In this document: positions 1-27,860 of the stretch, piece by piece
How the letters are laid out: each line of letters begins with the position of its first letter
Numbering within the stretch: position 1 is the stretch's first letter
Assembly: GCA_024704765.1 (NCBI GenBank)
Contig: JAKMXF010000068.1
Span: forward strand, 1-27,860
Reading direction: 5' to 3'
Origin: Oopsacas minuta
Lineage: Eukaryota; Animalia; Porifera
DNA length: 27,860 bases
Notes under the pieces: generated by a model
What the model was told of the DNA's origin: nothing
Seen by the model: the letters and a program-made list of their open reading frames with translations, nothing else
The model's database searches: none
Program-made: the position numbers and the translations under genes

Positions 1-260
1 AGTTTAGTATTCTTTTTAATATTATTACTTTTAACTGATTAATTGTTTTGACAATGATAAATGTATTTCATACGGAGTAGCTATAATGATAAAATTATAT
101 TTCCTAAATTTTCGGTTTTGCTGTTAATAATTACATTCAAAAACTACAAATTTCAATAATTCAAATTTACACTTGGAAGCATAAAAGGTTGGATGTCACC
201 ACTGAAACACCATGCCACTATTATTGTGAAGAAATTTATGTATAGTATATCTTCACTATT

Positions 261-407
261 TTGATACTTATCACGCCAAATTTAACATTTGGTATCGCAA
301 TACTAGAGCCAATTCGGATAAGCCGATGCCATTTTCAGATTCCCCGCGTTAAATATACCTAGAAACGGATCTAATATCTTAGGCAACAAATTGTTTGTTG
401 ACTAGTG
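261..407 (+). mobile_element. 3' (right) terminus of a Chapaev3-like (CMC) DNA transposon
   Basis: Ends ...tttgttgactagtg followed by TAA. The reverse complement CACTAGTCAACAAA begins with CAC, and TAA fits a 3-bp TWA target, both typical of Chapaev3. It matches the putative left TIR at 20347 (cagaggtcaacaaa) at 11/14. The inner boundary is approximate. Confidence 0.45.
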
Positions 408-537
408 TAATTCAAGAACTACTGTGTTTTGATGCAAAATAATTATTGCAGAAATCAGCCTAATAGAAATTACGTCACCAAAAATTGAGATTGAATGTAT
501 AATACGTACATAGCATTCTATATACTAAGGCAATGGC

Positions 538-9093: not shown

Positions 9094-9335
9094 TTGTACC
9101 TGCTTATACATGGGACTGTAATTCTAATTGTACACATATGGTTAGTAGTATAAGTTGAATTTAAAAAACTGCATCATACTTGGAACAATTATAACATATA
9201 ATGAAAATGAGAATATACATAACGGCAGAGCTATAATTCATAGGTTGTTTCATACTAAACTTCCAGCAGCCTAGGTTGCTGTTTAGTAATCCCCAATACG
9301 GTATATCAATTTCACATCGGTTAAAGTATTAACAT

Positions 9336-9354
9336 CTGTCTCTTATACACATCT
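9336..9354 (+). other. Tn5 mosaic end / Nextera adapter CTGTCTCTTATACACATCT (library artefact)
   Basis: Exact 19/19 match to the synthetic Tn5 mosaic end, ending 9 bp before the N at 9363. Confidence 0.95.
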
Positions 9355-9362
9355 CTAAAAGC

Positions 9363-9363
9363 N
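9363..9363. other. Single-N scaffold gap
   Basis: The N lies between an adapter-bearing contig end and a mariner terminal fragment. Confidence 0.85.
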
Positions 9364-9527
9364 ATCGTAAATGATGCTAAAAGAATACCTAAACCAAACT
9401 TTTTGATTACAAAAGTTAGGATAATTGAGATAAGGGATATTACAATTAATCGAAACAATAGGCTAATTGATTGAGTGTATATAACACAAACTAGGGATAA
9501 ATTCCGCGAACTTTTTGGACAACCTAG
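9364..9527 (-). mobile_element. 5' terminus of the mariner family seen at 27392-27860
   Basis: 9500-9527 reverse-complemented is ctaggttgtccaaaaagttcgcggaatt, 27/28 identical to the TIR at 27392-27419, followed by TA (9528-9529). The internal sequence differs from the 3' end, so this is the other end. Confidence 0.8.
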
Positions 9528-9529
9528 TA

Positions 9530-9928
9530 CATAGTGGTCACCCCTTTAGAATGTGAACACTTAATTTGTTCCCAAATGTCTAAATTGCATAGGATATGAC
9601 CTCTTAAAAAGTGAACACCGGTTTTTCTGCCAGATTTTTAACCAGGCTGTCAGCTTTGTTATCACACTAGTTGTGAAAAGCAGGGATGTTTGATGATGTG
9701 GCTTCACAATATACTAGAGGCTTCCCTATATTTTGGGCAGAAGAGACAACATATTTGCCTGTACAATGCTTTCACACATTTGTGTAAACATGGAGGTCCT
9801 ATAAATAACATTTTCAGAAATCTGTGGTCAATGTCAGTTGAATGGTTCCGGTCATAAAATGTGAACACCTCTCAAAAGTGAACCTTTTGGCTGGTCCGCA
9901 GGGTGTTCACCTTTTGGAGGCTTTAGTG
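9530..9928. mobile_element. Right-hand part of a CAGT-TIR, TA-target MITE (left part at 27316-27389)
   Basis: The right TIR reverse-complemented (cactaaagcctccaaaaggtgaacacc) matches 27316-27342 at 22/27. TA at 9929-9930. Repeated cctc..aaaa(g/t)gtgaacac subunits. There is no proper left TIR; the fragment starts directly at the mariner TA. Confidence 0.75.
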
Positions 9929-10034
9929 TACTTCGAATCAACTACAATGCACTTCTTATTTATCCCTGGTCCAGAAATAATATTAGTTTCCAGGCCTTAT
10001 ATTACGCGTAGTTCACGAACTACATTATTTATAC

Positions 10035-10044
10035 TTTATTTATT
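10035..10044 (-). promoter_or_regulatory. Candidate polyadenylation signals (two overlapping AATAAA) for the POT-family gene
   Basis: tttatt at 10035-10040 and 10039-10044 on the plus strand, about 95 nt past the stop codon. The AT-rich context makes a chance occurrence plausible. Confidence 0.35.
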
Positions 10045-10135
10045 ATAGTAATGTATTGTATAATAGAGCATAGAGTATAGAAGTTATCAATCGAACAATA
10101 AAAATATAAACTTAGGTACTTTATAATTTATATCA

Positions 10136-12079
10136 CTATAAGCTTTCTTGTTGACTATCCTGTTGATAAAGCTTTTCTTCTTTAGATCTCTTCCAATGGT
10201 TGTAATGAGAGAACAAATAAAACAGCGGAATCATCATCAAATATACTCCAATAACTAACACCCATATTACCCAACTATTATGCTGAACGGAACTTTTGCA
10301 ATGTGAATTATATACTAAACAGTATTTACTTATTGCAGGCGTGTTTGTTGAATTTATGTCTAAGTTTTGACAATGTAAAGTACAAAGTTTGTCAAATGTG
10401 AAATTAAAAATATTCAAAACAACACCTGCTAGGCCATAATAGAAGAAGAAAATAGAGAAGAAGAATCCCATTAAGGAATTTTGAAAATGGTTGCTACACA
10501 AATAGTAAACATACTGAAGCAATCCAATTATGGAAATACTCTCAAGAATTCCGGAAAACAAATATTGAGGTATTTGTGTAATTAATGGTACCATAGAAGC
10601 ATAAAAGGTAGACGAGTCTGTACAATTCAATTTATAAGAAAAATTCACACGACAAGTTTCTACTGTAACAGCACAAAGGGCACTTAATAGCCCAAACGGT
10701 AAACCCCAGAAAATCCTCTTTAATATAGGATTAACTAATGTAAAGTGTTTGCGAAGTTTATTTCGTATAGAAGACAAGCATTTATACCGAACACACACAA
10801 ATTTCCTTGGAACCCAACGAATCCAAAATGGAATATCACTGGGTAGTGAGAATATTATATCATGGAAAAAGTATTCTACAATCAAAGCGGAGAAGATAAT
10901 GGTTAATGGGTTAATGAACCAATAAGAAATGAAGTACGATTCAGTGCTACAGTAGAAAAACCTATTTTTCTCATCATATATTGGTAGAGGCAAGAAATTT
11001 AATGGAATAGCTTGTTCAGGAAAGAGTAAATATAAGATTTGATAGGTGGATAGTAATGGTGTGAGTATTAGAAAAATAAGATTAATTTTTGTCATTGCTA
11101 AGGTTTTATCAACCAGAGATTTAGCCATTTCATATTTATTTTTCCTCGCCGCATATAACATTAATGATTTATAATTTGTTTTCTTCCTTCTATAAAACCT
11201 CAGCAGAAATGCTGCTATTAAAAGTTTAAAGCCTTTCCAAAATGAGAAATTGTTTGCAGCTATTGCTGAGTCTTTAAAATATCCCAACCGCCTTCCTAGA
11301 ATAGTCAGAAGCAGGACAATTAATAAAACAAAGTTTGCTATTGAACAGTGGATATAGAAAGATGTTTTAAACCACCGAACATAAAGAAGGTAGGCTAAGG
11401 CACCACCAATGTTTTTAGCTATGTAGAATAATGGAAAATACATAAGTAATGTTTCTAATGGTGTTCCATCTAACAAATCCAATCCGAAAGTAATAGAAAA
11501 TGGATAGGAGAGTGAAAAAGACAATTCAAAAACAATGAGGGATAATACAGTAAAAGAGTACTCAATTCCAACAATGAAATCTCTAACTACTTCTATAGTA
11601 GCATTATTTTGCGATTTTAAAGCTTTTAATTTAGGATTTTCAAAGATTTCGAAAACAATTACAAACAAGAGACTTATACCCGCAAAAAATGCTAACAAAA
11701 GTGTGCCTAGAACCAAATAATATCTTGAAAATTGCTTTCGATCACAGAAGTATACAATAAATGGTACAAGTAAATAGGATGAGGAAGAAATAAGAGGGTA
11801 TGCAAATTGATTCTCAAAAACTGAGTGAAACGTTTTATCTAAAGTAACATTTATAATTTCTGTTGTATTGAGAAAGAAAAAGTATTGTAGACTTACTATA
11901 AGTAGGTGTAGGTAGAGGCCTGGCCTGTGTACAATGGGAATAGCTTTTCCGAAAAAGATTGAAGGTCTGAATGTATCCTTTCTGATATATAAAGGCTCTT
12001 CGATACGAGTTGAAGCTAGTAAATTCCCTAAAGACTCATCGTATGGGGCGATTTCGTTATCATGAATATCCTCAACCAT
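10136..12079 (-). CDS. Intronless POT/PTR2-family (SLC15-like) MFS transporter, divergent, 647 aa from the first ATG
   Basis: Uninterrupted ORF with about 12 hydrophobic segments. POT-like motifs in order: PFIVYFCDRKQFSRY (TM2-3 loop), FGLDLL (PTR2 FGxDQ-like), FYIAKNIGG (TM5), FINPLTII (TM8), LKRIFWGL..ALCAVTVETCR (TM9), QIPQYLFSGILES (TM10). The track start at 12097 is TTG; the first ATG is at 12079. Confidence 0.85.
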   Translation of the reverse strand: MVEDIHDNEIAPYDESLGNLLASTRIEEPLYIRKDTFRPSIFFGKAIPIVHRPGLYLHLLIVSLQYFFFLNTTEIINVTLDKTFHSVFENQFAYPLISSSSYLLVPFIVYFCDRKQFSRYYLVLGTLLLAFFAGISLLFVIVFEIFENPKLKALKSQNNATIEVVRDFIVGIEYSFTVLSLIVFELSFSLSYPFSITFGLDLLDGTPLETLLMYFPLFYIAKNIGGALAYLLYVRWFKTSFYIHCSIANFVLLIVLLLTILGRRLGYFKDSAIAANNFSFWKGFKLLIAAFLLRFYRRKKTNYKSLMLYAARKNKYEMAKSLVDKTLAMTKINLIFLILTPLLSTYQILYLLFPEQAIPLNFLPLPIYDEKNRFFYCSTESYFISYWFINPLTIIFSALIVEYFFHDIIFSLPSDIPFWIRWVPRKFVCVRYKCLSSIRNKLRKHFTLVNPILKRIFWGLPFGLLSALCAVTVETCRVNFSYKLNCTDSSTFYASMVPLITQIPQYLFSGILESISIIGLLQYVYYLCSNHFQNSLMGFFFSIFFFYYGLAGVVLNIFNFTFDKLCTLHCQNLDINSTNTPAISKYCLVYNSHCKSSVQHNSWVIWVLVIGVYLMMIPLFYLFSHYNHWKRSKEEKLYQQDSQQESL

Positions 12080-12779
12080 TCGATAGTATTGATCCAATCA
12101 GCTTAATAGCTTATTTAGTAAGATCTCTTTACATTGCTTTTATGAGCATACAGATGCATGTGGCTATATTCCTAACTATCAAGTTACTCACCATGAGAGT
12201 TAAGTTTTATTATACACCTAGAATAATAGTTAAAGATTGATTAAGTAATGTACACTGCTTATCTGAACGTCAATAATATTTAATTTCCCCTTGGGAATGG
12301 GAATTGAAATTCAATAATTTCCGAAACATCAGTTAGCTTGCACTTGTATGTTTTTCACCTGGGAAAGATTCTTGTCAGATCAATATGTATATATTTCACT
12401 CTTTGCCTTTGTTTATTCAATCTCAACATCGATAATATTTACGTTGGAGATTGGTTTGTATGCAAAATATTCAATTCTTTGCAACTTGCAATTTGTACTG
12501 GGAATGAAACCAAAATTATATGTATCACTGAACGGCCAAAATATTCGCATAATTTAGGCTTGTTTCTACGGAAGATTATGTGATTTTGAAAACTAATTTT
12601 TCAAAGAAATTAATACAATTATTCATGAACTGCAGCCTTACCGGATACTGATGCATATCAGAATATCATCCACTCGGGATTGTAGTAATTTTTCGGTTGA
12701 GCGAAATATTAAACTATTCGGTTGCAACCTAAGAAATAATAAAATTTCAAAAGTAATTAGTTGAATATTGATAAACGGG

Positions 12780-13069
12780 CAGGGGCTCAGCCAGTTCCTT
12801 TAACGAGGGGCGCGAGTGTGGTGAGAATGACTGGCAAGGGCTAAGGGGCGCATTACCGTGTGTGGGTATATATTATGTCTAACACAAATATTCACATACA
12901 CTGAAATAGTTCTTTGCTAAAATGGATATTTAGCGAATGATATATATATAGTCTCAATAATCCACTGAATTAATTTGTGAAATATATCTCGCCACAGATT
13001 GTGATTTGAGCTTGTTTATTTTCATCACTATAGGTCACGAGAGTGAGAAGGAGCCCATCTGCGCCCCTG
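12780..13069. mobile_element. hAT-type MITE upstream of the POT-family gene
   Basis: TIRs caggggctcag and reverse-complemented caggggcgcag match 10/11. The 8-bp TSD is taaacggg (12772-12779) and taaacagg (13070-13077), 7/8. Confidence 0.85.
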
Positions 13070-13624
13070 TAAACAGGCTGAGCCACATGATTATAACATC
13101 TCTGAATTTGGGGGATTTCCCGGCTCATAGAGCACGACACACTATTATCACAATTATACGTTAAGATGGGAAAAGGGTAAGATTCTAAAATTGAAGTGCC
13201 GCTGTACATAAAGTATTCCCATATGTAACGAATCGGCCGATAGTGGGCCTAGCCGAAGCAGTAAGCCAAACCTCTGACAATATAATAGCTAAATTACCAC
13301 CATCTTTGAAGGCTATCCAATATTTTTAAGCGCCGATCGGTCAGTGTAAGACATAATTCTGCCAGTAGACGCCTTATCCGGGGAATTATGTGTTTCCATT
13401 TACAGTCCCATTATGGAACCTATTATTCCATTCCAAATTTACCGAATTTGGAAATACACGCAAATTTTACTTATGAGAATATAATCAATGCCCCTCCCAC
13501 ATGTGAATGTAGTACGCTAATCCGAATTTGGCACTATCAAGTTTCTCATATGTCAATATATTATATTGATGTATATTATGCACAATAAAAGCTAAAAGAC
13601 AATTTGATGAGCCGAAAAATAGAA

Positions 13625-16435
13625 TTACACTAGATAGTTTGATTTCTTTTGTTTTCTAGTCCATATTTTGAACAAAATACAATCAAATAGCACAAGCTTA
13701 CGCTTAAATTTGTCATAGAATACGAGTACAAAAATCAACACTAAAGTAACTAGTATAACAATTTTAAAATATACATCGATTGAACTCTTCTGCAGTTGCC
13801 ATTTCGTATATTCGTCAATGTATCCGAAACGATTTCGATAATGACTCGGTAACTCAAATGGAGTTGGAATTGGGAATAAACTAAGATAAAATTCCCTGAT
13901 GAGAGATTTTACAACAGAAGCTGAAGCGGTATTATGATCAATGTTGTCGTTAATACAAATAAATTTCCTGGTATTCTTCCTAATCCAGTCAAGATGGCCT
14001 AAAGCTTTGGAAGAATTCTCATTTATCATTTTAAAAGCCACTTCATCCTCGTTCAAAATTTCAAATTTTCGTTTAGGCAGTACGGAATAGTGTAGTTTCA
14101 CGAGTTCAATTAGCTCTGTACATTCTGCGAAAAATTCTAGGTTAATTAAGGGCAAGTTTTCTCCATAATAGGACTCTGGTTCATCGTTAGGAAGTTCGGC
14201 ACGAGTACCCTCATATGAAATGCTACATTCATTTAAAATATCATAATAATTATTCATAGTTTCACGTGATAGAGGAAGTTCTTTCAAAAGAGCTATCAAA
14301 TTGCGTTGCTCTAAAATTGACAAAATTCCATTTTCGTCTGTATCAAATTCTTCGAATACCCTTCTAAGACTTATTGACTCAAGAGTTTCTGACATGTAAT
14401 AGTAATAGTATGAAAAACTGTACTGCATATCATCATTTTGACGTACTTTATGTGATGACGTGAGATCAAATTCCTCGCGGAATTCATCTTGCAGTTCCTG
14501 CATTATATCACGGTCAATTAAATGCGGCATATGTGCAGGAACCTTCCTAGCCTCGTGACCGAAACGTTTACTGAATTTCCGGTTTACATATTTGAGGGAT
14601 TCACCAAAAGTATCCATTAGCTTACGGCTTTGATAAAAAGGAATTCCCTCAGGCTTTCCGTAGAAATTTTCATCAGAATTTATCAAGATATGTTTTCCAA
14701 TATTCCTACTTAATTGATTTGAACTCGGGGAGAACATTTGCAATCCTCTATCAGAAATAGATATATTTGGACTGAAGGTCATTTCTAAGGTAGGTTTGTT
14801 AAGACCTCGTAAGATACTTTCAATATTATTAATCTCATCAATTGTAAGTTGATCAAGAGCTATTCTTATATGATGTACAAATCCATTATGAGTAAGAAAT
14901 CCTCCCAGGAATTGGGTAACTATCGGTTTCAGACCATCTCTCACAGATTCAGGTATTTCTGTGCTGGTTAATAGGAAATCTAATATTTGAGAAGTGAAGT
15001 TGAAGTGAGACAAAAAATCTTCTTGAAATGATTGCTTATCATCTCTGAGAGTAATTTTACCATTTTCTGGAGAAGAAAGGAAAGTTATTTGTTGCTTATT
15101 AATGGAGAATTTCTTCTCAACTAATTCGTACGAATCGAAAAGAGCGGGTGTAGTAAAGAGATTAGGTCCAGCTGATTGATTCATTACTCTAGAAATATTA
15201 AGAGATAATGTATAGTAAGTATTGATTGATCCTGCTCGTGATAGCGTTAAGAATAATGTAGAAGTTTCATTTGAAAACGGTAGATTATTATAAAATGTCA
15301 TAGTGAGGATATGATGTTTGCTTGAGTACACTGAAGTACGTATAGTATTGTTTGAATGGAAATAACCTGAAACCAAAGTCCAGTTATCCTTCTTAGGGAA
15401 GTTATCGGATAAATTGAAATAAGCTGCCGGTGTACCTAATGGCAGATAAAATAATTGAGTTGCATTGGTGAAATCTATATAAAACTTGAGTAGACGGAAA
15501 TGTTCTTCTATACCACAATCACCTGAATCAAAGCCACAATCAAGCATGAAACAAGAGGTATCGCAGTAGCGATCTCCCATCCACGAATTCGGACATCCAG
15601 CAGCGCAATAGCCACTTGTATCCTGCGCATAGCGTGAATAATCCGAATACCCCCAACGCCCCATCCTTCCTCGTGTTTTTGTTGCATTACAATCCCCAGC
15701 GTCCATCTCACACTCAGTATAATTACAGGATGAATCACAATATCCATCTCCAATCCAAGACGAAGGACAACCGTCGCGACAATTCGGCACAGACCAGGAC
15801 AGATAAATTTTCTGACCTTTAGTATCTGAATAGAAATCTTCTGGCCACACAGGCTGACCTAACATAACATCATCATTCAAATACAAGAATTTCTTGGATA
15901 AACCAGGGATTCTGTGTATATGCGATTCTATAGACGGGGAAGAGAATGTAGGAAGATGCGAGATGTTCTGGAATATCTCATGATGAGTTACAATTGAGAC
16001 TCTTGTATGAGACAAGTCAAGCCAATAAGGAATCTGTCCATTCGTGACAATGTATATATGACGTATCCAAGGCGCATATTTCAACACAGAACGAATTGAA
16101 TAACGTAATTCTTCATTATCTTCAAATCTGTTCAAAGAATAGTCGTCTAATTCATTTTCAAATCCTATATTGAATTTATCGTGAATAGGATTCCATACAA
16201 TACGTGCGGCATTTATTGCGAAAGTACTTTCATTTTTATCCGTGACCAAGTCAGTATTATACGAATCTGATGTTATCTTGTAGATTATAATAGATTCTGT
16301 ATCCAAATCATGCTTGGAAATTATTGTGAAGTATTGATTAGAAGAAATAGAGTTCAGTCGGTCAGTCAATTGGCTCGAATTAGTATTGTTGCCACTAATT
16401 ATGTAATAGTTGGTAAGAGGAATACTGTTGATTAC
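13625..16435 (-). CDS. GNPTAB: GNPTAB exon 2 (936 aa plus stop)
   Basis: Acceptor ttcttccctag|GTAATC is in frame (phase 0). Stealth CR2 (RFEDNEELRYSIRSV...FSSPSIESHIHRIPGLSKKFLYLNDD); two LNR/Notch repeats; DMAP-like segment (GFLTHNGF); S1P-type site RKLM|DTF; CR3 (RKVPAHMPH...DMQYSFSYYYY); EF-hand (FDTDENGILS); CR4 (KFICINDNIDH); C-terminal TM helix. Confidence 0.95.
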   Translation of the reverse strand, partial: VINSIPLTNYYIISGNNTNSSQLTDRLNSISSNQYFTIISKHDLDTESIIIYKITSDSYNTDLVTDKNESTFAINAARIVWNPIHDKFNIGFENELDDYSLNRFEDNEELRYSIRSVLKYAPWIRHIYIVTNGQIPYWLDLSHTRVSIVTHHEIFQNISHLPTFSSPSIESHIHRIPGLSKKFLYLNDDVMLGQPVWPEDFYSDTKGQKIYLSWSVPNCRDGCPSSWIGDGYCDSSCNYTECEMDAGDCNATKTRGRMGRWGYSDYSRYAQDTSGYCAAGCPNSWMGDRYCDTSCFMLDCGFDSGDCGIEEHFRLLKFYIDFTNATQLFYLPLGTPAAYFNLSDNFPKKDNWTLVSGYFHSNNTIRTSVYSSKHHILTMTFYNNLPFSNETSTLFLTLSRAGSINTYYTLSLNISRVMNQSAGPNLFTTPALFDSYELVEKKFSINKQQITFLSSPENGKITLRDDKQSFQEDFLSHFNFTSQILDFLLTSTEIPESVRDGLKPIVTQFLGGFLTHNGFVHHIRIALDQLTIDEINNIESILRGLNKPTLEMTFSPNISISDRGLQMFSPSSNQLSRNIGKHILINSDENFYGKPEGIPFYQSRKLMDTFGESLKYVNRKFSKRFGHEARKVPAHMPHLIDRDIMQELQDEFREEFDLTSSHKVRQNDDMQYSFSYYYYYMSETLESISLRRVFEEFDTDENGILSILEQRNLIALLKELPLSRETMNNYYDILNECSISYEGTRAELPNDEPESYYGENLPLINLEFFAECTELIELVKLHYSVLPKRKFEILNEDEVAFKMINENSSKALGHLDWIRKNTRKFICINDNIDHNTASASVVKSLIREFYLSLFPIPTPFELPSHYRNRFGYIDEYTKWQLQKSSIDVYFKIVILVTLVLIFVLVFYDKFKRKLVLFDCILFKIWTRKQKKSNYLV

Positions 16436-16911
16436 CTAGGGAAGAACATATTCAGGAATTCAGTAAATCGAATTAGAATGTAATCAATTATATATCACAA
16501 TTCTAAAAGTGAATGGTAATGAGGCTAGGTATAATACATAACACAGGTGTATATATTTATACAGATGAACTTGTATAAGACGTTCACCCTCCGGAAACGA
16601 AGATTAGTATGTCTTAAGTCGAGCACGTATGAACCGAGTTCTACTGTATGTCAAATTTACTGATTAAAAGTTGTAATACGAATTTGGTAAACAAAATCTA
16701 TTAACTTAGCTTATTATCCCCTATGATTTGTACTTCCCAAATATATTGGAGAAAGTTAAAAGGGAGTACAGAAAACGGTCATTTTGGGTGCCCAAACTTT
16801 CTGGACCAAATTTTCAAATTAGACCATACAATATAAATGATATTTTCAATTTAAGGCCAGGTGTAGGCATCAGAAATCGAAGATTAGAATTTTCCGTAAT
16901 TTACTGAATAC
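16436..16911 (-). other. GNPTAB: GNPTAB intron (476 bp, GT-AG, phase 0)
   Basis: Donor AAG|gtattc at 16912/16911 and pyrimidine-rich acceptor ...ttcttccctag. The join gives ...FVTSEK-VINSIPL... in frame. Confidence 0.8.
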
Positions 16912-17586
16912 CTTTTCACTGGTGACGAATGAACCAACAGCTGGAACAATCTCTCCCTCAAAAGTTATATTATCACCCAGTGCCATCTCCACAGCTTGGA
17001 TATTACTCATCTTCACAAACGTTACTACTTCTGAACACACGTTTATGGTCTCGCAGGTCTCGATAACCTTCTCCACAAGCAGGTTATCAACGTTCCAAAA
17101 TACCTCATTACCTCTTATAGCAGGAGCTAACCCCTCCCTATAGCTTAATACCAATACATTGAATGGCACACAGTGTCTGAGTCTACAAGTCTTATTAGGT
17201 AATAGAATATCAAATCCTTTGGAGGTGGTATTCATACTTGCTTTGGTCAAATTCGCTTCAAGGGTGACATTAGTGTTTTGTTCTTCTCTCAAATTTCGCT
17301 TCACTTCATTTAATGTTTGAATAAGTAGAGGATCAGATCCGTTCACCCATGTATATACGACATCAATTGGCAGATAGGAACTGAGGTGTTCATGTAAATC
17401 TCGGGCAGCAATATTATCAGAAAATTCTGATGTAGAGTATTGTAGAATGGTAGGACGTCTGAAGAATGGCCAAAGATGGAACTGATCGGAGAATAACATC
17501 AAAATGAAGATACAAGTAAGGACACCAGCTAAAGATATTAGTAGCCCATTACGTGTGGAGAAGCATTCACTGGTTAGTTTCATCAT
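16912..17586 (-). CDS. GNPTAB: GNPTAB exon 1 (225 aa)
   Basis: ATG start, short cytosolic tail, N-terminal TM (GLLISLAGVLTCIFILMLF), Stealth CR1 (LPIDVVYTWVNGSD) and a spacer-1 motif (TCRLRHCVPFNVLVL, resembling vertebrate ECLLTHCIKVPMLVL). Confidence 0.92.
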
Positions 17587-17796
17587 TTGGTGAAATGTTC
17601 TCAGAATACAACTATAATTTACAAAAATATAAATAATTCTATAGATAGTTATTTTAACATTAAACTAATTTTCAGAAAATGTTGTGCACTCAATCGGAAC
17701 AAGAGCGATTGACTGATATTATCAAGCATGTTATTCGCAATTGTGGAAATGAAATGAGATGATAGTTACTGTGAAATTGGTAGGTAAAACTATGTA

Positions 17797-17882
17797 AGGT
17801 GTAACATCCACAATCGGGGTGTCAGGAACGCTGAAAAATGTTACCCCATTAGCCAAATAACCCGTTTGTGGAGGTTTCACTG
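17797..17882. mobile_element. 86-bp TA-flanked mini-MITE upstream of GNPTAB
   Basis: The left end ta-aggtgtaacatccacaatcgggg is an imperfect inverted copy of the right end (reverse complement ta-cagtgaaacctccacaaacgggt). TA on both sides. Confidence 0.5.
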
Positions 17883-18277
17883 TAATAACAAATAACTAAT
17901 AGATATGTCGAAATAAAGCCAGTGCTGACTGTGGAGGGCTTGAAGATTGAAACATCGAATATGCGTCAAGCGACAAATTTAAAGATTTTCAAAAAAAATT
18001 AACTGCTCCGTGTATTAGGGAAGCCCTATACATCAAAAGAACTGAATTTGAAATAGTGATAGAATTCATGCGTGTTAACCTTTGTCAATCATATCCGTAC
18101 TATATTAGCACAGGACAGTGGATATTCCAGGTTATTCCTTCTGAGTATCAATCTAAAGTGGTCGAACTCTAAATTTACGCTCGCTCATAATATTGGTCAC
18201 CCAAACACATGCAAACTGTTAAGGGACCTTATTCGTTAACATTTCTAAAACTTAAATAAACTGAGTCTATAGCCTAT

Positions 18278-18386
18278 ACTAAGCTTGAGTTAAGATTTGC
18301 CTTTACTAAGCTCGAGTTAAGATTTGCCTTTTACTATGCTTGAGTTAAGATTTGCCTTTTAGTATGCTTGAGTTAAGATTTGCCTT
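18278..18386 (+). repeat. Minisatellite, 4 x 27-28 bp
   Basis: Unit actaagcttgagttaagatttgccttt(t) in head-to-tail copies at 18278, 18305, 18333 and 18361 with 1-2 substitutions each and no spacers. Confidence 0.95.
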
Positions 18387-18571
18387 GAGTTTATCCTCGA
18401 AACTTCACCCAAAAACTTTGGCTTAAGGTCACTGTTAATGAGAAACTTGTTGCAGCTCCACAAGAGATTCACCTGACCATACATGCGGGTGGGCGGCTCC
18501 TTCTCATTTCTAATTGATCCTGAAACTACTTATACTCGACCATAACTGGTCCCTTCAACAAGTTAAGGTCA

Positions 18572-18880
18572 ACTCTATCTGGTCCTAGTATGTTCATATC
18601 TCCTGGGTGTATCTTGTAGCGATGTATCTAGTCTTTTATCGAATCAGTAAATGATATTCAATTGTGATGTGTGTTTTGTTCACTATTTCAGCTGTATTAA
18701 CGAAATGTACCTTGGATTAATTTCAGGCTTGCTCCTCTATGTTGTCCGATGTCTAACTACCCCCTGGTAGTTGGATTGGGTCTTCGGGATCGAAATCTAT
18801 ATGCTGAATCGGATATGATCGAATTTGTTAAGAATATTGGCTATAATTGATGTCTGCAATATTCGTTCCACCCAGGACCA
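18572..18880 (+). repeat. Copy B of the diverged duplicated segment (partner 538-1363)
   Basis: Same colinear blocks as copy A. It is 51 nt shorter between the gctcct block and the ttgttaag block. Confidence 0.6.
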
Positions 18881-20346
18881 GTGCCGTACGCGGACCATTT
18901 AAAGAGTTACAGTCTCCAAAAATTATATCTTTGTAAGTTGACAGAAATTCTTTTCCTGCCATAGCAGGATGATTATATACATTATATGCTATGACCTATA
19001 CCCTATGGAGGATCACACTTTGGGTCAGACCACATTTTCATCCGTGCGATGTTACTGAATCAAGTGGGAGGCTTAGTTCACCCAATGAGGAAATTTACCC
19101 CCACTCTAGTGTATAGTAGCCCCTAAATTCGCGAAAATACCTCCTCTAAGTTACTATACATATAGTATTTCCCTGAAATCTCTTCGAGGGTTGAATAAGC
19201 CTCGGGGGGCTAGAAATGACTCTATGACTTGTGAATAATTTACCACCACCCTAAAAATAATTCTATTCATATAAGTAGTATAGATGTGTTCAGTACTAAA
19301 TGGCAATACATACAGACACACTATATGCTAACGAGTTTGTTCACCCTGTTCACTTTTGCATAGTATATTTCCACGTATTTCTTTCTAATAGATGTCTATA
19401 TAATTAACCATCAAACTGGAATTCAGGTTCAATTCTCTAACTATACTATTAATACGCAATTAATCTATACTAACGCGATTCGTTTGCTAGGTCCCTGCGT
19501 GACAGCTTAGTGCTCCAGGTTAGCTTAATTATTGCACAGCTAAATTTTATAGTGTTATTGTTCACTACGCGACAGAATATACTCAGCACTACGTGCATGG
19601 AATTCACAGAATATTTTAATATTTATTATCCAAATTACAATAACTGGCCTTCTGTGGTGACAGACGCTATGTCGCTTTGTGTTGGTCGGATGTCAAGAAA
19701 TTGTGAAGTTTTTGGAAATTTAGAAAGTATATTTGTACAGTCATGATGACGTGATAATCCCATGATGAGTTAGCTTTTGGTCAGAATCATGACATCAGGA
19801 CATTTGCCACATTGTAGGGTATCCGTGATTCAAATTTCAAACTTCTGTCATGTATATTGGCTGAGCAGTCGCTAATAATGTGATTTTCAAAATCCAAAAA
19901 TGTAACAATGACTTCATGGTTAGTCATGGGTGTGAATTTTCGTCCAAGATTCGAACTTGTCCGAGCCAGGCCCAAAATACCCCTGTATGCCAAAAATCAG
20001 CCCTGGGGGTGTTCCAGTTTCTTCAATCAATTCTGGACATACAAAGATTTTCAGTAGACATTAATACGTACACTAGGGGACTACCAAAATTCGTACTCCT
20101 TATCAGGAGTACGTATCATCCGAACTAATTTACATTGAAAAGGCATCGAAGAGGACTGATAAAGTGTAAAAATTTGTACTCCTTACTGTGTTCGTATAAA
20201 CGAGACTCTACGTGATCTATTTGAACGTATTATACGTCTAGGTTAACCTCGAAATATCAGATTTTGACATTGTAGACTTGTTTAAGTCACATAGTTATCA
20301 AGTATTATATAATTTGGTCAACTGTACTGAGATTTCTCATTAATGA

Positions 20347-21096
20347 CAGAGGTCAACAAAAAATATTTTGTTTCTGTGTTGCCGAAGATTTTAGGTTAAA
20401 TTTAGACTATATTTGCTGTGCTGAGTTCGAAAATAACATCGGCTTTGCTGGATTGGCTCTTGATTTTGGTCCACATTTATGTTTATATTGTTAATTACCT
20501 TTTACAAATGTATATTCGATTTAATCAATACTTTTATAATTATAAGTATCTAGCAGATTCTAACTCTATGGCATCATCAAGAAGAAAATGTTCTAATGAT
20601 CCTAATACGTTCTGTTACAGATGTGGTGAATATACGTTGAAAGATCAGAGAAGAGGTATCCCAGACTTTGTGCGAAAGGCATACTTTGATTACTTCAAGG
20701 TGAAGCTTGGAGACCAAGACAAGCCATGGGCTCCGCATATTGTGTGTAAAACATGTAATGAATATATTCATAGAGAAGAAGGATTACCACACTACTTTAG
20801 CCAACAAGAAGGCCTCGTCTTTTGCAATGACATTGAAGGACTTCTCCTGGAAATGGGAGTACCACAATATAAACCAGAAGATTGGCGTCTACTCATTGAT
20901 AGTTCTAAGAGAAGCTTGAAGTGCGTTTTATTGCATAATGGAAATAAATATGCATCTATTCCAACTGGACATTCAACAAAGCTTAAGGTGGAGTAGGAAA
21001 ATATTTAAATGGTATTGCAAAAATTGAAATATCATGAACACCAGTGGTTGATATGTGTTGATCTCAAGATGGTAAACTTTCTACTTGGCCAACAAG
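20347..21096 (+). mobile_element. 5' part of an internally deleted Chapaev3 transposon (transposase pseudogene from ATG at 20568)
   Basis: Chapa domain (RKCSNDPNTFCYRCGEY...AYFDYFKVKLGDQDKPWAPHIVCKTC) fused directly to the catalytic region (WRLLIDSSKRSLKCVLLHNGN...QWLICVDLKMVNFLLGQQ). In-frame stops near 20994 and 21006. Putative left TIR at 20347. Truncated by the N at 21097. Confidence 0.85.
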
Positions 21097-21097
21097 N
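21097..21097. other. Single-N scaffold gap
   Basis: The N joins the middle of a Chapaev3 ORF to the middle of an unrelated Tc1/mariner-superfamily ORF. Confidence 0.85.
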
Positions 21098-21509
21098 GTA
21101 TCACAAGATTGGTTGTCAACGAATTTACCAGGCTTTTTATCCCGTATCGATTGGCCTCCTGCAAGTCCAGATCTAAACCCTTGCGACTATTATTTATGGG
21201 GGAGATTAGAGGAATTAGTGAATAATAGAGCATACGATAATATTCCAGCACTTAAACGGGCTTTATCCAAAGTTTGGTCTGAATTAGACAAAGATGAAGT
21301 AGCTCGGGCCTGCAATTTGTTCCCAGACAGAGTGAGAAGTTGTCTGAAGGCCCGAGGGAATAGATTTGAAATGAACTAGATTCAAACTGTATTGAAATTA
21401 TGAAATTAATTATAGTTTATTAATCTTAGTCAGCCTTTAGAGTTGGTACTTCCCTTTTATGTATTCAATGAATATTTCCATTTTGTTGCAGAACTTTTGT
21501 GTCACCCTG
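21098..21509 (+). mobile_element. 3' part of a Tc1/mariner-superfamily DDxD (maT/DD37D-like) transposon
   Basis: QDWLSTNLPGFLSRIDWPPASPDLNPCDYYLWGRLE...KARGNRFE, with Asp as the third catalytic residue. Right TIR ...gaacttttgtgtcaccctg followed by TA (21510-21511). The D-D spacing cannot be counted because the 5' part lies in the gap. Confidence 0.85.
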
Positions 21510-22011
21510 TACTTTTAAAAGAACAATTCCTTACATATGGAGTAACTTGAAAGTGCTAAATTTGAAATCAGCGTACTCGATTAACCCAGTAAAACACTTG
21601 AAACCAAGTTTCTGAGACTATTTTGAAATTTGTTTACTTTAAAAATACACCGAAGCAATACCTAATATTTCGAATACTTTGATAACAATATAATAATTGA
21701 ATTCAGCGTATTCCATTATTCACTTGGTAACAATGTTCGGGATAACATTATTCTCTAAGGAATCATGTTCGAGTTAAAATAATTCACGGGAATACTATTC
21801 ACTGAGACGCCGGTTCGGTGTTTCAGTTTGGACTCGGACTAGAGACAGGTTAGAAATAATTGAGTGCTTTTGCATATTGTTTATTAATAGAATTCTAAAA
21901 TAAGGTTTTCTTCTCTTGAATGAGAGACACGATATACTGTTTGGTCATTTCACTTCCTCTAGCGAATTCTTTCCCTACTCTTTTATGGTATGCAATTTTG
22001 AAATTGTCGCA

Positions 22012-22291
22012 TAACTATGTATAAATCTTGTTTATCAAGGAAGTAAATATAATTCAATAAAAAGCACTAAAAATATCGAACTGCTGAATCCGATTTTCAC
22101 ACTTTTGGATTAATCAGATGTAAATTTATTGTTGTTTTTATGAATATAAAGTAAACAAATTGTTGAAATATTAATTTATTTATTCAATTTTGCAATTTTA
22201 TACCTCGTTAAGTTCCAGGCTAGAAGTGACGAGTCCCATGCGAACACTTTATATTCTCAAGCCGCGCAGCGCGAGCAAGCGAAGCGCCTCG
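22012..22291 (+). mobile_element. Non-autonomous Helitron, copy 2
   Basis: The 22032-22159 core is shared with copy 1. The 3' end is gccgcgcagcgcgagcaagcgaagcgcCTCG|T. The 5' boundary is approximate. Confidence 0.65.
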
Positions 22292-22722
22292 TTCGTAGAA
22301 AATTCGAATGAGTACACTCCCTTCTATTTCTTTGAGATATTTTAAAATATATAAATACATGAATGAAGAAATAATCAAGCAAAATTATACGTAAAGAACA
22401 AAAATGTCCTACAGACAGACAGGGATTGCAGCTTTGGGCCATCACTCATATCTTGACCTATTAATAAGTGTAAGAGCGAGGGTTCAAAAGAAGCACTATG
22501 CTAAAATATACCAACTTGGGAGAGACAGGAATATTGGGCAGAAGTATCCTCTCTAGAATGGGAGCGTGACGAATTAAAAACAGAATTACAGTTGCTTAGG
22601 GTGGAAGTTGCCGAACTTTGGTAAACCGAAATAAAACTCTTAAAAAATGTGTAAAAGGATATATTTTTTTGCTAAATAAATACTCCAGTCTTGTATTCTT
22701 ATATTGATAACCAATTTAATTA

Positions 22723-22851
22723 AGCCCCCCATACACGATGCAACTGTTGCATACAAAATGTTGCATGCAACAGGCAACATACACGGTACAACAATGTTGC
22801 ATGATATTAGTACAATTTCGTGCAACATTGTTGTACCGTGTATGGTGGGCT
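22723..22851. mobile_element. PIF/Harbinger-type MITE with a nested perfect inverted repeat
   Basis: tta|agccccccatacacg ... cgtgtatggtgggct|ttta gives near-TTA flanks. Perfect 24-bp inverted repeat at 22778-22801 and 22821-22844. Confidence 0.65.
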
Positions 22852-22950
22852 TTTACACGTTGCATGGCCATATCTCGGAAAGTATTGGTCCGTCATACAA
22901 GTTCAAATTGCAGAGAATTAGGTCATACCCCAGCTGTTCTCTTTAGGTTT

Positions 22951-23602
22951 CTAAATAAAATTAATTATGCTGAGCGCCTCAACATACGTAATCTCCCTGC
23001 TGTTTGTATCTATATTGAGCTGTAGATCTGAACCTTTAGAGCATATACATTTGAGGATAACTTCTAGTGTTATGTTATGGATAAGTAGAACAAACTCTAT
23101 TGGCTCTTTCCCATTGCTATCTCGATTGATGACTTCCATCATCCTATCACTGGATTTATTCATTATCTTTTTTTGACGAAGTTTATTAAACTTTGATATT
23201 AGAATGTCGGAGTTAATAATTTCCAGTTCCTCTTCCAAATTACTCCTTCACTGAGTACCAGTTCATTCCAACCAAGGTTCCATCATGTAATTGAATATTA
23301 TTATTTGATTCTACTTGATTGATTTCCTGCTGTGCTACCTCTGGTCCTGTTACCATAATACTGAAAATTGGACCATATATCATCCTACCTAATCTGGGAT
23401 AATCCTTGATTGTATTTTCCATATTTGTGAGAGATTTTCTATTAAATTTCATAAATTTCATTCGGAAAATAGGATGATCTAGTTTAGGTCCTGGTAGCCT
23501 TCATCTTATATCGCTATATCGTGTCACGAAGCGGAATAACTTGGCGAGTAAGTATAACCCATAACTCAGAAGTAGAATCCAGCACAGTGAGTACAAGCTT
23601 GT
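22951..23602 (-). pseudogene. Cytochrome P450 (CYP4-clan-like) pseudogene, N-terminal third
   Basis: SLYSLCWILLLSYGLYLLAKLFRFVTRY (TM anchor plus basic patch), a stop at 23501-23503, then RLPGPK.HPIF (proline motif) and YPRLGRMIYGPIFSIMVTGPE. A stop and frameshift follow near 23240, then IMNKSSDRMMEV..ITLEVILKCICSKGSDLQLN..YVEALSIIN, resembling CYP4A MTLDTIMKCAFSHQGSIQVD..YIQAISDLN. No I-helix, ExxR or heme motif was found. Confidence 0.7.
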
Positions 23603-25728
23603 CTATCGTATAAATATTTTTGTACAGTATTTAGCATTTTACTATTCATGTAATGAACGCTATCAACATGTGTAGTTTTTAGAAACAGATTCAGATTTCA
23701 CTAAGTTTTATATCCCCTAGATTCTAGTACAAGACTGAATGTTTATATTGAATTATTACTACGCATACGCATAATTGTGTTTGAGTGTAAAGTTCATTAT
23801 TTGCGTAGTCTAGATAAATTTAATTACCTACGATTTACAGAGTTGTAATTACTAATTACTTCCATCTGATACCTCATATCTTTTATCAAGTTAAATGTGA
23901 AATAGCCAACCAAATTAAGGATAGCCCAGTGGAACCTTTGTAATGATTCTGAATAGCATACATACTTAAGTTTGTACTTTCGGTATCTCATTAACCCTCG
24001 GAGAGCAGAATTTAAAATTACGAGGATTTTTCTTCAATAAGCTGCGTCATCTTCACACTTCGAACATAATTTATTGGAAATTTAAGTCCAAATTTATGCA
24101 ATGTATGTTAGCGTAATCGTGGAAATTTCAGTCATTTCGATCTCATAGCTTCGTCAAAACTCAGTGCTATTTAAAGGGACGGATCATGGGTGTGGAGGAT
24201 GCTGGGCGCCAGCAGAGGCCCCCTTCAACCGTTGCCGATCCAAAAGAAGTTTGAGATAGCAGGGACATTTTTACGATAAAGTTGCCTCACTCTTCTTTCA
24301 TTTTTGGCTCTGCGTTATGGCGCCCCGCTACTACTTCAACGTCAAGAATCCATGCAAAAATAATTACGGTGTATTTTCTGTTGGTTCCAGGAATTGTATT
24401 TCGCCATGTCTGAGCTATAGGACATTACAGCAGAGTTAATTAAGAAATTTCAAGTTTCTCTTCAAGATGGCTATGATATAGATGTCAAGGTGAAAGTAGT
24501 ATTGTCACCTACTGACAATCTGCCTCTCGTATTCAGGCGTTTGTAGAAGTAATTGTATTACATACATATAGTATAGTATTCAAATTCTAACGAAGTGCTC
24601 AGGCTCGAACTTTTAGTACAAGAAGCACAGAAAAGAGTTTTGGATTTTAACTTTATGATAATAAAGGGTTATTCTATTAATCAGGATCCACCTTATTTTA
24701 GAATTTTATTAATAAACAAAATGTCAAAGCCCTCAATTATTTCTAACTTGTCTGTAGTTCTAGTCCAATCTGAAAACCGAACTGGCGTCTCAGTGAATAG
24801 TGCCTTGAATTATGTTCGCTCGAACATGATTCCCTAAAGACTAATGTTACCCCGAACATATACCTAGCGCGGTGGCTTATCCAGGAGATATTTGGTGTTC
24901 AAACAACCTCCTCGTAACTGATTTCCAAAAGAGATATGTTATTATTTATAATTCCATTTTCCTTAATAAGCGCAGAGCTTCTGGAATCTTATTTACAGAA
25001 TGCTATCCAATTTTCACAATTACATTTTCAACGAGTTTTCGAGATGATATCGTACAAGACTCCAGATGACTAATCACTAATGTATTAGCAGAGTAAATTT
25101 GTATTGACTAAATAGATTATGTTATCTGAAAATAAGCATCTAAACACCTAAACATCTAACAACTTTGGTACAACTGCACAATATTACACTCCTACTATGT
25201 GACTAGAGTAGCTGTGAAAATTCTCCTAAAGAACCCCTGTGGACGCAAAATTGCCTATGCTAGAGAATTCTATACACTAAGGTAATGGTGGGTACTAAAA
25301 TTTTGAACCAGGGATTAATTGGATACCTCAATATTAACATAGATAAATTCTATTTGTCGCGACAGAATTAAAATCGTGCATATTGATGATTTATTGATAT
25401 TTGACAATACACACAGTCTATATCTACAAAGTATTTGTGGGCTGAAATGAAGTCATCTGCTTGCTTACTTAGCTATTATGTCAAAGAAATGCTCCAATGT
25501 TAAAATTCTGTAATAAATTAATTACTAGTTTAATACATTTAACATTTCTAATTTTGTATGATGTAATCAAAGGATATTTTCACCTAAATATCAATAATAT
25601 GTCATGATAAAGCTCTCGTGGTTTACTGATAATTATAGTAGTGACCATGCATGGCATATTTTGCCAATATTTACCAAGATCAGAGAAATCATATCAAAAT
25701 GAATTATCAAGGTATGGGAAGTCGGGTA

Positions 25729-26458
25729 CAGTGGAACCTAAAAAACCAAAACTCGGGATGTGAAAATTATGTCAGTTTAGCACATTGTCAGATTGTGCCA
25801 GGGGGTCACTAGGTGAAGGTATTTACCCATAGGGTACTTCATTGAAAAATACATTTTTGGACCTACCCACCACTACCCCTCACGAAGTACCGATACTTCG
25901 CCAAATTCTCGCATTTGACCCCTACACCACCCCTGAAATTCCTATAATTCGTTGCTCTTTGAATCTCAAACTTAGTACTGTTTAGATTTAGTATGGATTT
26001 TTGTCCCAATGTAAGTTAATATTTGAATTTCTATAACTTTCATATGTAATTAAAGTGATTTGTAAAATACTAGTAAGCAGCTAATTTATTTAAAGATTTC
26101 TACTTCTTTCTTTTCTATCAGAATATATACCTCTATGCAAGAGTGTTTAACATTGTAATTAGCTAGTTATAATTGGTATAACCAGGTATAAGTCAATTTG
26201 TTCAGTGTTATAGGACAAATTATGCTAACAAAACTGTGAATATATGTTAGCTACAATGATGTGGGGTTAACTGGATGTATTGCAGAAATTAGGAACAAAT
26301 AATTAAGTTATACACAATTAGTTACTACGTACTGAGTGAATCAGTAACATTATGAGTGACCCCCCCTGATTATGAAGGTGAAATTGTATTGTCGGAAGCC
26401 ATTTCAGATCCGAAACACTTCCGGATTATACATGTGTCGGTTTGCGCAGGTTTCACTG
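25729..26458. mobile_element. Putative CAGT-TIR, TA-target MITE
   Basis: ta|cagtggaacct at 25727 and aggtttcactg|ta ending at 26460 (10/11 inverted match). An inner inverted pair gggggtcact/agtgacccccc is also present. It could be two separate fragments. Confidence 0.45.
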
Positions 26459-26789
26459 TATATACTATGTGTGTAAGTTGATTTGACCATAACAATGAAG
26501 GTTATCAAGTAAAAATATGCCATCAATGGTCACTACAATAACACTGAAACGCGGGAACTTTATCATGACAAAATTTGGATATATTGTGCAGCAACCTTCC
26601 TAGATCCCATGGTATAAAATTTGAAATGTTAAGTGTATTAATTGACTCATTACAGAGTTTTAACATTGGAACATTTCTTTGACTTAATCGCTAAGTAAGC
26701 AAGGTATTCAATCAATCCCAGGTCCCAATTTTCAGTGATTACCATTGCCTTAGTGTATAGAATGCACTCTCTAACAGTCACGTTTAGAG

Positions 26790-26979
26790 GGAGGTCCCGC
26801 TTTTTCGAACATGTGTTGAGGGCCAATAAGACTAATGTCCAGCCAAAACCTGCCAAAAACCTTAATTGTCCCGTTTTTTGTAGTCCAGTCTAATACAAAT
26901 TATATGCTATATCCCGCGATGTCCCGCTAAATTAGTACCTTCTGTCCTGCTTTATTCTTCACTCAGGTTGGCAAATATG
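26790..26979. mobile_element. Right-end fragment of a hAT-like element
   Basis: Repeated (t/g)gtcccg subterminal motifs and a terminal caggttggcaaatatg (reverse complement catatttgccaacctg). No partner TIR found. Confidence 0.35.
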
Positions 26980-27315
26980 AATGCTATGCCTAGAGATTTT
27001 AATGAATTCTGCGCTTTAATTGATGCTAGAACAATTAATGATATTATTACAGGTCTGGATTCGGTTCATCGGTTAACCACCACTATAACCAACTAACTGA
27101 ATATTGTCGTTTCCATCAATTTATTCATTATTTCTATGGTTTTGAGATGTACAGAATGATAAATAAACGAATCCGGTTGGTAAAGTAATTTTGCTGTTAC
27201 ATTTTTGGTTCGTATACAAATTTCAATCATTTTGCCAGATAAAATCTCATCACTTTTGCATTCGCGTATGTAATAACTATCGATGGATTTTTGTCCAAAA
27301 CATAAGTTATTTGTA

Positions 27316-27389
27316 CAGTAAAACCTCCAACAAATGAACACCTCCAAAATATGAACACTTTTCTCGGTCCCGAATTTCTCCCATTGTTC
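27316..27389. mobile_element. Left-hand part of the MITE whose right part is at 9530-9928
   Basis: ta|cagtaaaacctccaacaaatgaacacc TIR and subrepeat, cut at a TA (27390-27391) by the mariner TIR. Confidence 0.75.
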
Positions 27390-27391
27390 TA

Positions 27392-27860
27392 CCAGGTTGT
27401 CCAAAAAGTTCGCGGAATTGCAAATATATTTTATTTATCAATGATCATACTCAACTAATTATTGTTCATAGTTTTCAATAAATTCACCCTTAACCTCGAT
27501 ACATTTCTTCCATTTTGATGGGAGTTTATTTATTCCTGTGGTGACGAATTCTTTCAGGGGTACCTTGAATCCATGAATTTACAGCGAACTTAAGGTGCTC
27601 AAAATCGCTGAAACGTTTACCTCTAAGTGGTCTTTTCATTTCTGAAAAAAGCCAGTAGTCGCTGGGCGCTAGATCTGGGCTGTATGGGGGATATGGGAGT
27701 AATTCGAACCCTAAATGTTGAATTTCATCCAAAGTTCGCCTGCTGGAATGGGCTGGAGCATTATCATGCTGAAGCAAAACATGAGAACTCAACTTGCCAC
27801 GCCTCTTAGACTTGATAGCTTCGCGCAATTTCTTCAGAACTTGAACATAGTATTCAGTAT
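27392..27860 (-). mobile_element. 3' part of a mariner (DD34D) transposon with a frameshift; runs off the window end
   Basis: LLQHDNAPAH...YSPDLAPSDYWLF with exactly 34 residues between the two Asp. A frameshift near 27545 gives ...GINKLPSKWKKCIEVRGEFIENYEQ with the stop at 27459-27461. 28-bp TIR at 27392-27419 with TA outside. Confidence 0.95.

What the first reader, a model, noticed from the sequence alone, without database searches (positions are those of the whole stretch)
9364..27860. One mariner-in-MITE insertion appears split, with its halves in permuted order 18 kb apart
Seen: at 27316-27419 a MITE left arm is cut at TA by a mariner 3' TIR. At 9500-9928 the same mariner family's other TIR (27/28 identical) is followed by TA and a MITE remainder that has a matching right TIR (22/27) but no left TIR. 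Both mariner ends have the same orientation. Joining 27316-27391 to 9530-9928 gives one seamless MITE (...ctcccattgttcTAcatagtggtcaccc...). Inference: the right junction lies upstream of the left junction. Either the contig 21098-27860 truly precedes the contig 9364-21096 (contigs swapped at the N gaps), or a mariner-carrying MITE was mobilised or duplicated as a composite.
Basis: partly seen in the sequence, partly recalled or inferred. Interest (0 to 1): 0.75.

Follow-up and report, generated by a model that had tools for sequence, protein, structure and literature searches.

The report
Mis-ordered scaffold splits one nested transposon
The two "halves" are one ordinary mariner transposon inside a small MITE, and they look permuted only because this draft scaffold lists its three contigs in the wrong order (equivalently, each on the wrong strand); this is an assembly error, not biology.

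Summary
Contig C (21098-27860) ends 469 nt into a ~1313-bp mariner that cuts a MITE left arm at a TA. Contig B (9364-21096) starts with the last 164 nt of the same mariner family in the same orientation, followed by TA and the rest of the MITE. At least 13 intact MITE copies elsewhere in this 61-Mb assembly read straight through the predicted join. Each junction occurs only once in the assembly. None of about 20 other full mariners sits in this MITE.

The decisive new result is a second split element in the same scaffold. Repeat X ends contig B (20340-21096) and resumes at the very start of contig A (1-408). Three uninterrupted X copies elsewhere show about 717 nt between those two parts. The true order is therefore C-B-A with orientations kept, while the file says A-B-C. 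This is a systematic scaffold-writing or scaffolding error. The single Ns are not gap sizes.

Other first-stage readers of this scan noted the same reversed order on at least seven other pieces of this genome; those notes are unchecked.

One oddity remains. The MITE's right flank is the end of a foldback-like repeat Z, but its left flank is not recognisably the rest of Z.

Interest is low: an ordinary nested transposon plus an assembly artefact.

The parts
1..408 (+). Right-hand part of repeat X at the very start of contig A. It continues the X copy that ends contig B.
   Evidence: In five other X copies (L067, L068, L073, L075, L076), sequence matching window 1-408 follows sequence matching window 20768-21096 in the same orientation. 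The spacing is 717-719 nt in the three N-free, undeleted copies.
9336..9354 (+). Tn5/Nextera mosaic-end adapter, 8 nt before the end of contig A.
   Evidence: Exact 19-nt match. There are 27 such sites in the assembly and 0 in the control.
9363..9363 (.). Single-N contig join A|B. The sequences on its two sides are unrelated.
9364..9527 (-). Last 164 nt of the mariner as read on the + strand. This is the transposase 5' end with the CTAGG-type tip at 9500-9527.
   Evidence: 96-98% identical to the same end of about 20 full copies.
9528..9529 (.). TA target-site duplication of the mariner, right copy.
   Evidence: All full copies are flanked by TA.
9530..9928 (+). MITE-1 remainder with its right terminal repeat. 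Its own TA is at 9929-9930.
   Evidence: 78-94% identical to other copies in the assembly. Terminal repeat and TA confirmed.
9929..10023 (+). Outer ~95 nt of one arm of the foldback-like repeat Z. Homology starts exactly at the MITE's TA.
   Evidence: 40 listed matches. nhmmer E = 1.6e-26. Alignment.
20340..21096 (+). Left-hand part of repeat X at the right end of contig B.
   Evidence: At least 30 copies at 84-97% identity. Continuity with window 1-408 shown.
21097..21097 (.). Single-N contig join B|C. It places the interior of X next to the interior of the unrelated Tc1-like element Y.
21098..21514 (+). 3' part of the Tc1-like element Y at the start of contig C. It includes the transposase C-terminus and a terminal repeat at 21482-21514.
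27163..27315 (+). Left flank of the MITE ('W'), ending in TA at 27314-27315. It is not recognisable as the missing part of Z.
   Evidence: One 69% match, at about C28:10302-10448, ends exactly at the MITE boundary. The Z profile finds nothing here. End-anchored similarity to Z gives p of about 0.02.
27316..27389 (+). MITE-1 left arm with its left terminal repeat.
27390..27391 (.). TA target-site duplication of the mariner, left copy.
27392..27860 (-). First 469 nt of the mariner as read on the + strand. This is the CCAGG-type tip and the transposase C-terminal region with the D34D stretch. It runs off the scaffold end.
   Evidence: 96-98% identical to about 20 copies. Translation. DDE_3 hit.

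Best explanation
There is one real, ordinary nested insertion. A ~1.31-kb mariner-like element, with its transposase on the minus strand, inserted at a TA inside a ~475-bp TA-flanked MITE. This MITE lies about 200 nt downstream of a POT/SLC15-like gene. The short-read assembler could not carry contigs through the high-copy mariner (96-98% identical copies), so contig C stops 469 nt into it and contig B starts 164 nt before its other end. About 680 nt are missing. The permuted order is an artefact of how the scaffold was built or written. The true layout is C-B-A, or equivalently rc(A)-rc(B)-rc(C). The file gives A-B-C with every contig left unflipped. The single Ns are placeholders and do not measure gaps. 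What is shown: the anatomy, the uniqueness of both junctions, and a second split repeat (X) with the same permutation in the same scaffold. What is inferred: the cause. Either contig strand flags were ignored when the scaffold was written, or read-pair orientation (FR versus RF, for example a Nextera mate-pair library) was mis-specified in scaffolding.
For: (1) The mariner pieces are complementary and non-overlapping, in the same orientation, with TA on both sides and the family-typical asymmetric tips. (2) At least 13 intact MITE copies read through the predicted join. (3) Each junction occurs once in 61 Mb, and none of about 20 other full mariners lies in this MITE. (4) Independent second case: B's right end (20340-21096) and A's left start (1-408) are parts of one X element. 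They are separated by 717-719 nt in the three N-free, undeleted copies and are joined in the same orientation in five copies. (5) The joins as written put unrelated sequences together: adapter junk next to the mariner interior at 9363, and the X interior next to the Y interior at 21097. (6) Both apparent breakpoints coincide exactly with assembly gaps. (7) Unchecked notes from other first-stage readers describe reversed order with kept orientation on at least seven other pieces of this genome. (8) Tn5 mosaic ends are left in the assembly 27 times, so Nextera-type reads went in untrimmed.
Against: The flanks of the MITE do not rebuild one element. The right flank is the outer 95 nt of repeat Z, starting exactly at the TA. 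In all seven Z copies examined, Z continues 20-170 nt further left. The left flank in contig C shows only a marginal resemblance over about 15-30 nt (p of about 0.02) and no profile hit. No reads, long reads or second assembly could be consulted. X is a multi-copy repeat, so the B-to-A continuity is a strong coincidence argument, not a proof of physical linkage.
Confidence: 0.86

Rival explanations
1. The MITE carrying the mariner exists in two or more genomic copies. It was either mobilised as a ~1.8-kb composite by the MITE's own transposase source or carried in a segmental duplication. Contig C would then show the left junction of one copy and contig B the right junction of another.
For: The left flank ('W') and the right flank (Z) of the two halves do not belong to one recognisable element. 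This is what two different loci would give.
Against: Only one left junction and one right junction exist in the assembly at up to 3 mismatches. No Z-type flank joined to a MITE left arm exists. The 74-nt left arm is short enough for reads to thread, so a second copy should have produced a second junction contig. The two halves sit in the same 3-contig scaffold. That scaffold shows the same permutation for an unrelated repeat.
Confidence: 0.06
2. The order A-B-C is real and the permutation is biological. For example, a tandem duplication or a transposition of the 18-kb block could place the right junction upstream of the left junction.
For: It is the order written in the file. No read data were available to contradict it directly.
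Against: It needs two independent rearrangements, one in the mariner and one in X. Both breakpoints would have to fall exactly on assembly gaps, and both would have to give the same order-reversed, orientation-kept pattern. The sequences abutting each N are unrelated, and one is adapter.
Confidence: 0.03
3. There is one locus (C then B), but the MITE copy is a recombinant or has an adjacent deletion. Ectopic exchange between two MITE copies, or an aberrant transposition event, would have removed the left part of Z. This refines the best explanation and does not replace it.
For: Z homology stops exactly at the MITE's TA on the right. The left flank is not Z. The only relative of the left flank ends at the same TA.
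Against: Truncated Z fragments exist: L090 loses homology about 45 nt left of the site. A short Z fragment could therefore have been the target. The last 15-30 nt of the left flank do resemble Z weakly. With a TA duplication, no informative target-site test is possible.
Confidence: 0.25
4. Two independent mariner insertions hit the same TA of two different MITE copies, making that TA a target hotspot.
For: Mariners insert at TA and can show local site preference (general knowledge).
Against: None of about 20 other full mariner copies is in this MITE. The two partner junctions that this model needs are absent. Same site, same orientation and exactly complementary truncation by contig ends would all have to coincide.
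Confidence: 0.01

Closest known systems
Mariner-like elements (Tc1/mariner superfamily, mariner family; Pfam PF01359 transposase)
   Same: Length 1303-1327 bp, 28-nt terminal inverted repeats, TA target duplication, a 353-aa transposase with PF01359 and D,D34D spacing, and many near-identical copies.
   Different: Nothing unusual. The window's copy is frameshifted near the C-terminus. Its middle ~680 nt are simply not assembled.
Tc1/mariner-type (Stowaway-like) MITEs
   Same: 447-649 bp, non-coding, CAGT... terminal repeats of about 27 nt, TA duplication, and tens of copies at 78-94% identity.
   Different: Its autonomous partner was not identified here. One copy carries a nested mariner.
Scaffold mis-ordering or strand errors in short-read and mate-pair draft assemblies
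   Same: Contig breaks fall inside repeats. The joins have no sequence support. Order is reversed with orientation kept. Leftover Tn5/Nextera adapter is present. Mis-scaffolding in Nextera mate-pair assemblies is a recognised problem (PMC4458127).
   Different: The exact software cause could not be established from sequence alone.

Membership tests
mariner-like element | Element of about 1.3 kb with short terminal inverted repeats | tested here: met
   About 20 full copies of 1274-1327 bp with 28-nt tips. The window's tips are 27/28 identical.
mariner-like element | TA target-site duplication | tested here: met
   Every full copy is flanked by TA on both sides. In the window, TA is at 27390-91 and 9528-29.
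mariner-like element | Transposase of the mariner family (PF01359) with the D,D34D catalytic spacing | tested here: met
   PF01359 E = 1.6e-20 on the intact 353-aa ORF of L008. There are 34 residues between the HDNA aspartate and the PSDY aspartate in the window's own frame -2 translation.
Tc1/mariner-type MITE | Short, non-coding, multi-copy element with terminal inverted repeats | tested here: met
   At least 13 distinct full copies of 447-649 bp. Terminal repeats match 22/27 in the window's reconstructed copy.
Tc1/mariner-type MITE | TA target-site duplication | tested here: met
   TA flanks nearly all copies. In the window, TA is at 27314-15 and 9929-30.
Tc1/mariner-type MITE | Terminal repeats shared with an autonomous transposase-encoding partner | not tested
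   No partner was searched for. The nested mariner has different tips, so it is not the partner.
single nested insertion split by assembly | The two halves join seamlessly at one duplicated target site | tested here: met
   Intact copies carry the joined sequence. TA is present on both sides.
single nested insertion split by assembly | Each junction is unique in the genome | tested here: met
   One hit each at up to 3 mismatches. The extra hits at C109 and C177 are not MITE junctions.
single nested insertion split by assembly | The outer flanks of the host MITE rebuild one continuous target | tested here: inconclusive
   The right flank is Z and the left flank is not clearly Z.
scaffold order/strand artefact | Other elements in the same scaffold show the same permutation at the other gap | tested here: met
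   Repeat X: B's right end continues into A's left start.
scaffold order/strand artefact | Read pairs or long reads contradict the written order | not testable with these tools

The most novel reading that the evidence does not exclude
The MITE with its mariner passenger is not a one-off. Either it has been mobilised or duplicated as a ~1.8-kb composite, or the copy is the product of a transposon-end-associated deletion or ectopic MITE-MITE exchange. Either would explain why its left and right flanks do not belong to one Z element.
Probability: 0.1. Interest if true: 0.3.

Novelty: not a real feature. Interest (0 to 1): 0.1.

Why it matters
There is no new biology here. A mariner nested in a MITE is routine in repeat-rich animal genomes. 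The practical point is data quality. In this assembly, contigs joined by single Ns appear to be written in reversed order, or on the wrong strand. Any gene model, synteny call or "rearrangement" that crosses such an N is therefore unreliable, and similar "split, permuted transposon" findings from this genome should be discounted. The assembly also retains Tn5/Nextera adapter sequence.

Tried and rejected
1. I tried to find a second assembly or an orthologous locus through the neighbouring POT-like gene.

2. I tried a flank-continuity test. The hope was that the MITE's left flank (contig C) and right flank (contig B) would be two parts of one repeat. The right flank is Z, but the left flank is not recognisably Z. 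The test neither confirms nor refutes adjacency.

3. A second left junction at C109:21089 turned out to be a chance 10-nt match in non-MITE sequence. The C177 hit is a mariner in an unrelated site.

4. A target-site duplication test for repeat X failed. Its exact termini could not be fixed from the copies held.

I did not work around this.

6. Other single-N joins in the held loci (for example C25:97985) were uninformative about order.

7. A literature search for the mariner tip sequence found nothing.

8. The organism was not identified.
Full report
WHAT THE WINDOW IS. The window is the complete 27,860-bp scaffold C68 of a 61.5-Mb, 365-scaffold assembly. It consists of three contigs: A (1-9362), B (9364-21096) and C (21098-27860). 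They are joined by single Ns at 9363 and 21097, and GC content is 35-38%. The content is animal-like. Contig B carries, on the minus strand, a GNPTAB-like gene (Stealth CR1-CR4 plus Notch LNR domains, 13625-17586). It also carries an intronless POT/SLC15-like ORF (10136-12097), whose relatives carry PF00854. The rest is dense with transposons. I did not take it for human, and I did not identify the species.

CHECKING THE OBSERVATION.
- In contig C, a MITE left arm (27316-27389, preceded by TA) is cut at TA (27390-91) by a mariner tip. The mariner runs to the scaffold end, giving 469 nt of it.
- Contig B opens with 164 nt of the opposite end of the same mariner family. This is followed by TA (9528-29), 399 nt of MITE ending in the right terminal repeat, and TA (9929-30).
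- The two tips are 27/28 identical. The single CCAGG/CTAGG difference is shared by most full-length copies, so it is a family trait.
- Both pieces place the transposase on the minus strand.
- The element is a genuine mariner. About 20 full copies measure 1274-1327 bp, are 96-98% identical and are all TA-flanked. L008 and L009 hold an intact 353-aa ORF, and the L008 ORF matches Pfam PF01359. The D,D34D spacing is readable in the window's own copy.
- The host element is a genuine TA-flanked MITE family. At least 13 distinct full copies of 447-649 bp exist. These copies contain, uninterrupted, the sequence formed by joining the window's left arm to its right remainder across one TA.

ONE INSERTION OR SEVERAL. 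Junction strings of 23 nt, searched with up to three mismatches, occur once each in the assembly. The reversed-pattern controls gave zero hits. The only near-hits are a mariner in unrelated sequence that shares 10 nt by chance (C109) and another in an unrelated site (C177). None of the other full mariners is in this MITE. The left arm is only 74 nt, so reads would thread from a second flank into the mariner if a second composite copy existed. No such contig exists. A search for a left arm preceded by a Z-type flank also found nothing.

WHY THE ORDER IS PERMUTED. The key new result is that the other gap of the same scaffold shows the same permutation for an unrelated repeat.
- Contig B ends inside repeat X (20340-21096; at least 30 copies).
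- Contig A begins, at base 1, inside the later part of X.
- In five other X copies, sequence matching window 20768-21096 is followed in the same orientation by sequence matching window 1-408. In the three N-free, undeleted copies the spacing is 717-719 nt.
- So B's right end leads to A's left start, just as C's right end leads to B's left start.
- The true layout is C-B-A, or equivalently each contig should be reverse-complemented in place. The file gives A-B-C.
- The joins as written have no support. At 9363, adapter junk abuts the mariner interior. At 21097, the X interior abuts the interior of an unrelated ~1.33-kb Tc1-like element Y.
- Both "breakpoints" fall exactly on Ns.

A biological cause would need two independent rearrangements landing exactly on assembly gaps with the same geometry. 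After I had found this, a look-up showed that other first-stage readers had noted "contigs in reverse order with orientation preserved" on at least seven other pieces of this genome. Those notes are unchecked, and I did not test them on their own DNA. They agree with a systematic error.

LIKELY CAUSE (INFERENCE). There are two candidate causes.
- Strand flags were ignored or inverted when scaffolds were written. This turns a minus-strand scaffold into this exact pattern.
- Read-pair orientation was mis-set in scaffolding. Outward-facing mate pairs read as inward-facing, or the converse, place neighbours in swapped order with strongly negative gap estimates. Some scaffolders print such gaps as one N; this last point is from memory and was not checked.

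The 19-nt Tn5 mosaic end sits 8 nt from the end of contig A. It occurs 27 times in the assembly against 0 for the control. Nextera-type reads were therefore used without full trimming. Mis-scaffolding with Nextera mate pairs is a recognised problem (PMC4458127). Other scaffolds contain long N runs next to broken mariners, so single Ns are a distinct class of join.

A RESIDUAL ODDITY. The 95 nt to the right of the MITE (9929-10023) are the outer end of one arm of a ~500-bp foldback-like repeat Z. The evidence is 40 listed matches, inverted pairs about 320 nt apart, and nhmmer E = 1.6e-26. Z homology starts exactly at the MITE's TA, which looks like an insertion into Z. In all seven Z copies I could read, Z continues 20-170 nt further left. 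The sequence left of the MITE in contig C is not recognisable as that continuation. There is no profile hit. There is only a marginal end-anchored resemblance over 15-30 nt, with an empirical p of about 0.02 against 1,396 other TA sites. Its only relative is a 69% match in scaffold C28, which stops at the same TA.

Possible explanations are as follows.
- The target was a short truncated Z fragment. Such fragments exist, for example L090.
- A deletion or MITE-MITE exchange removed the left part of Z.
- Two composite copies exist. This is less likely given the junction counts.

VERDICT. The nested mariner-in-MITE insertion is real but ordinary. The permuted order is an assembly artefact affecting the whole scaffold and probably many others in this genome.

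Noticed in passing
window 9336-9354; also 26 other sites in G000: The Tn5/Nextera mosaic-end adapter (19 nt) is embedded in assembled sequence. It occurs 27 times in the assembly against 0 for the reversed control. Twice it lies 8-9 nt before a single-N join. This is adapter contamination of a deposited assembly.
   Followed up: partly
window 1-408 and 20340-21096: Repeat X is about 1.9 kb with CAC(A/T)GG...-type inverted termini and at least 30 degenerate copies. One short ORF (20418-20996) has no Pfam match. X was not classified.
   Followed up: partly
window 21098-21514: Contig C starts inside a ~1.33-kb Tc1-like element Y. It shows a transposase C-terminus with a WPP.SPDLNP-type motif, a 33-nt terminal repeat, and about 6 copies at 94-96% identity.
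   Followed up: partly
window 25262-25662 and 26512-26768: A large inverted repeat with arms of about 400 nt at 75-90% complementarity forms a ~1.5-kb foldback-like element in contig C. It has a weak resemblance to the Z family (nhmmer E = 0.012 at 25399-25492).
   Followed up: no
L008 (G000:C55) and L009 (G000:C23): Two mariner copies keep an intact 353-aa transposase ORF. Most copies are 96-98% identical. This suggests a recent and possibly still active burst.
   Followed up: partly
L093/L094 (G000:C82, about 19258 and 31022): Scaffold C82 ends inside one arm of a Z element. A contig that begins after a single N at about 19258 starts inside the opposite arm, and the two arms share private variants. 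This may be another case of mis-ordered contigs. The sequence between could not be fetched.
   Followed up: no
window 10136-12097 (-) and 13625-17586 (-): There is an intronless POT/SLC15-like ORF of 653 aa. It has no Pfam hit itself, and its relatives at 48-67% identity carry PF00854 and occur in multi-gene arrays on single contigs. Next to it is a GNPTAB-like gene (Stealth CR1-4 plus LNR) with very large exons.
   Followed up: no
window 8868-9051 and 21982-22161: A further short repeat family, about 130-180 nt aligned, is present in both contig A and contig C and at other loci (L067, L074, L086).
   Followed up: no
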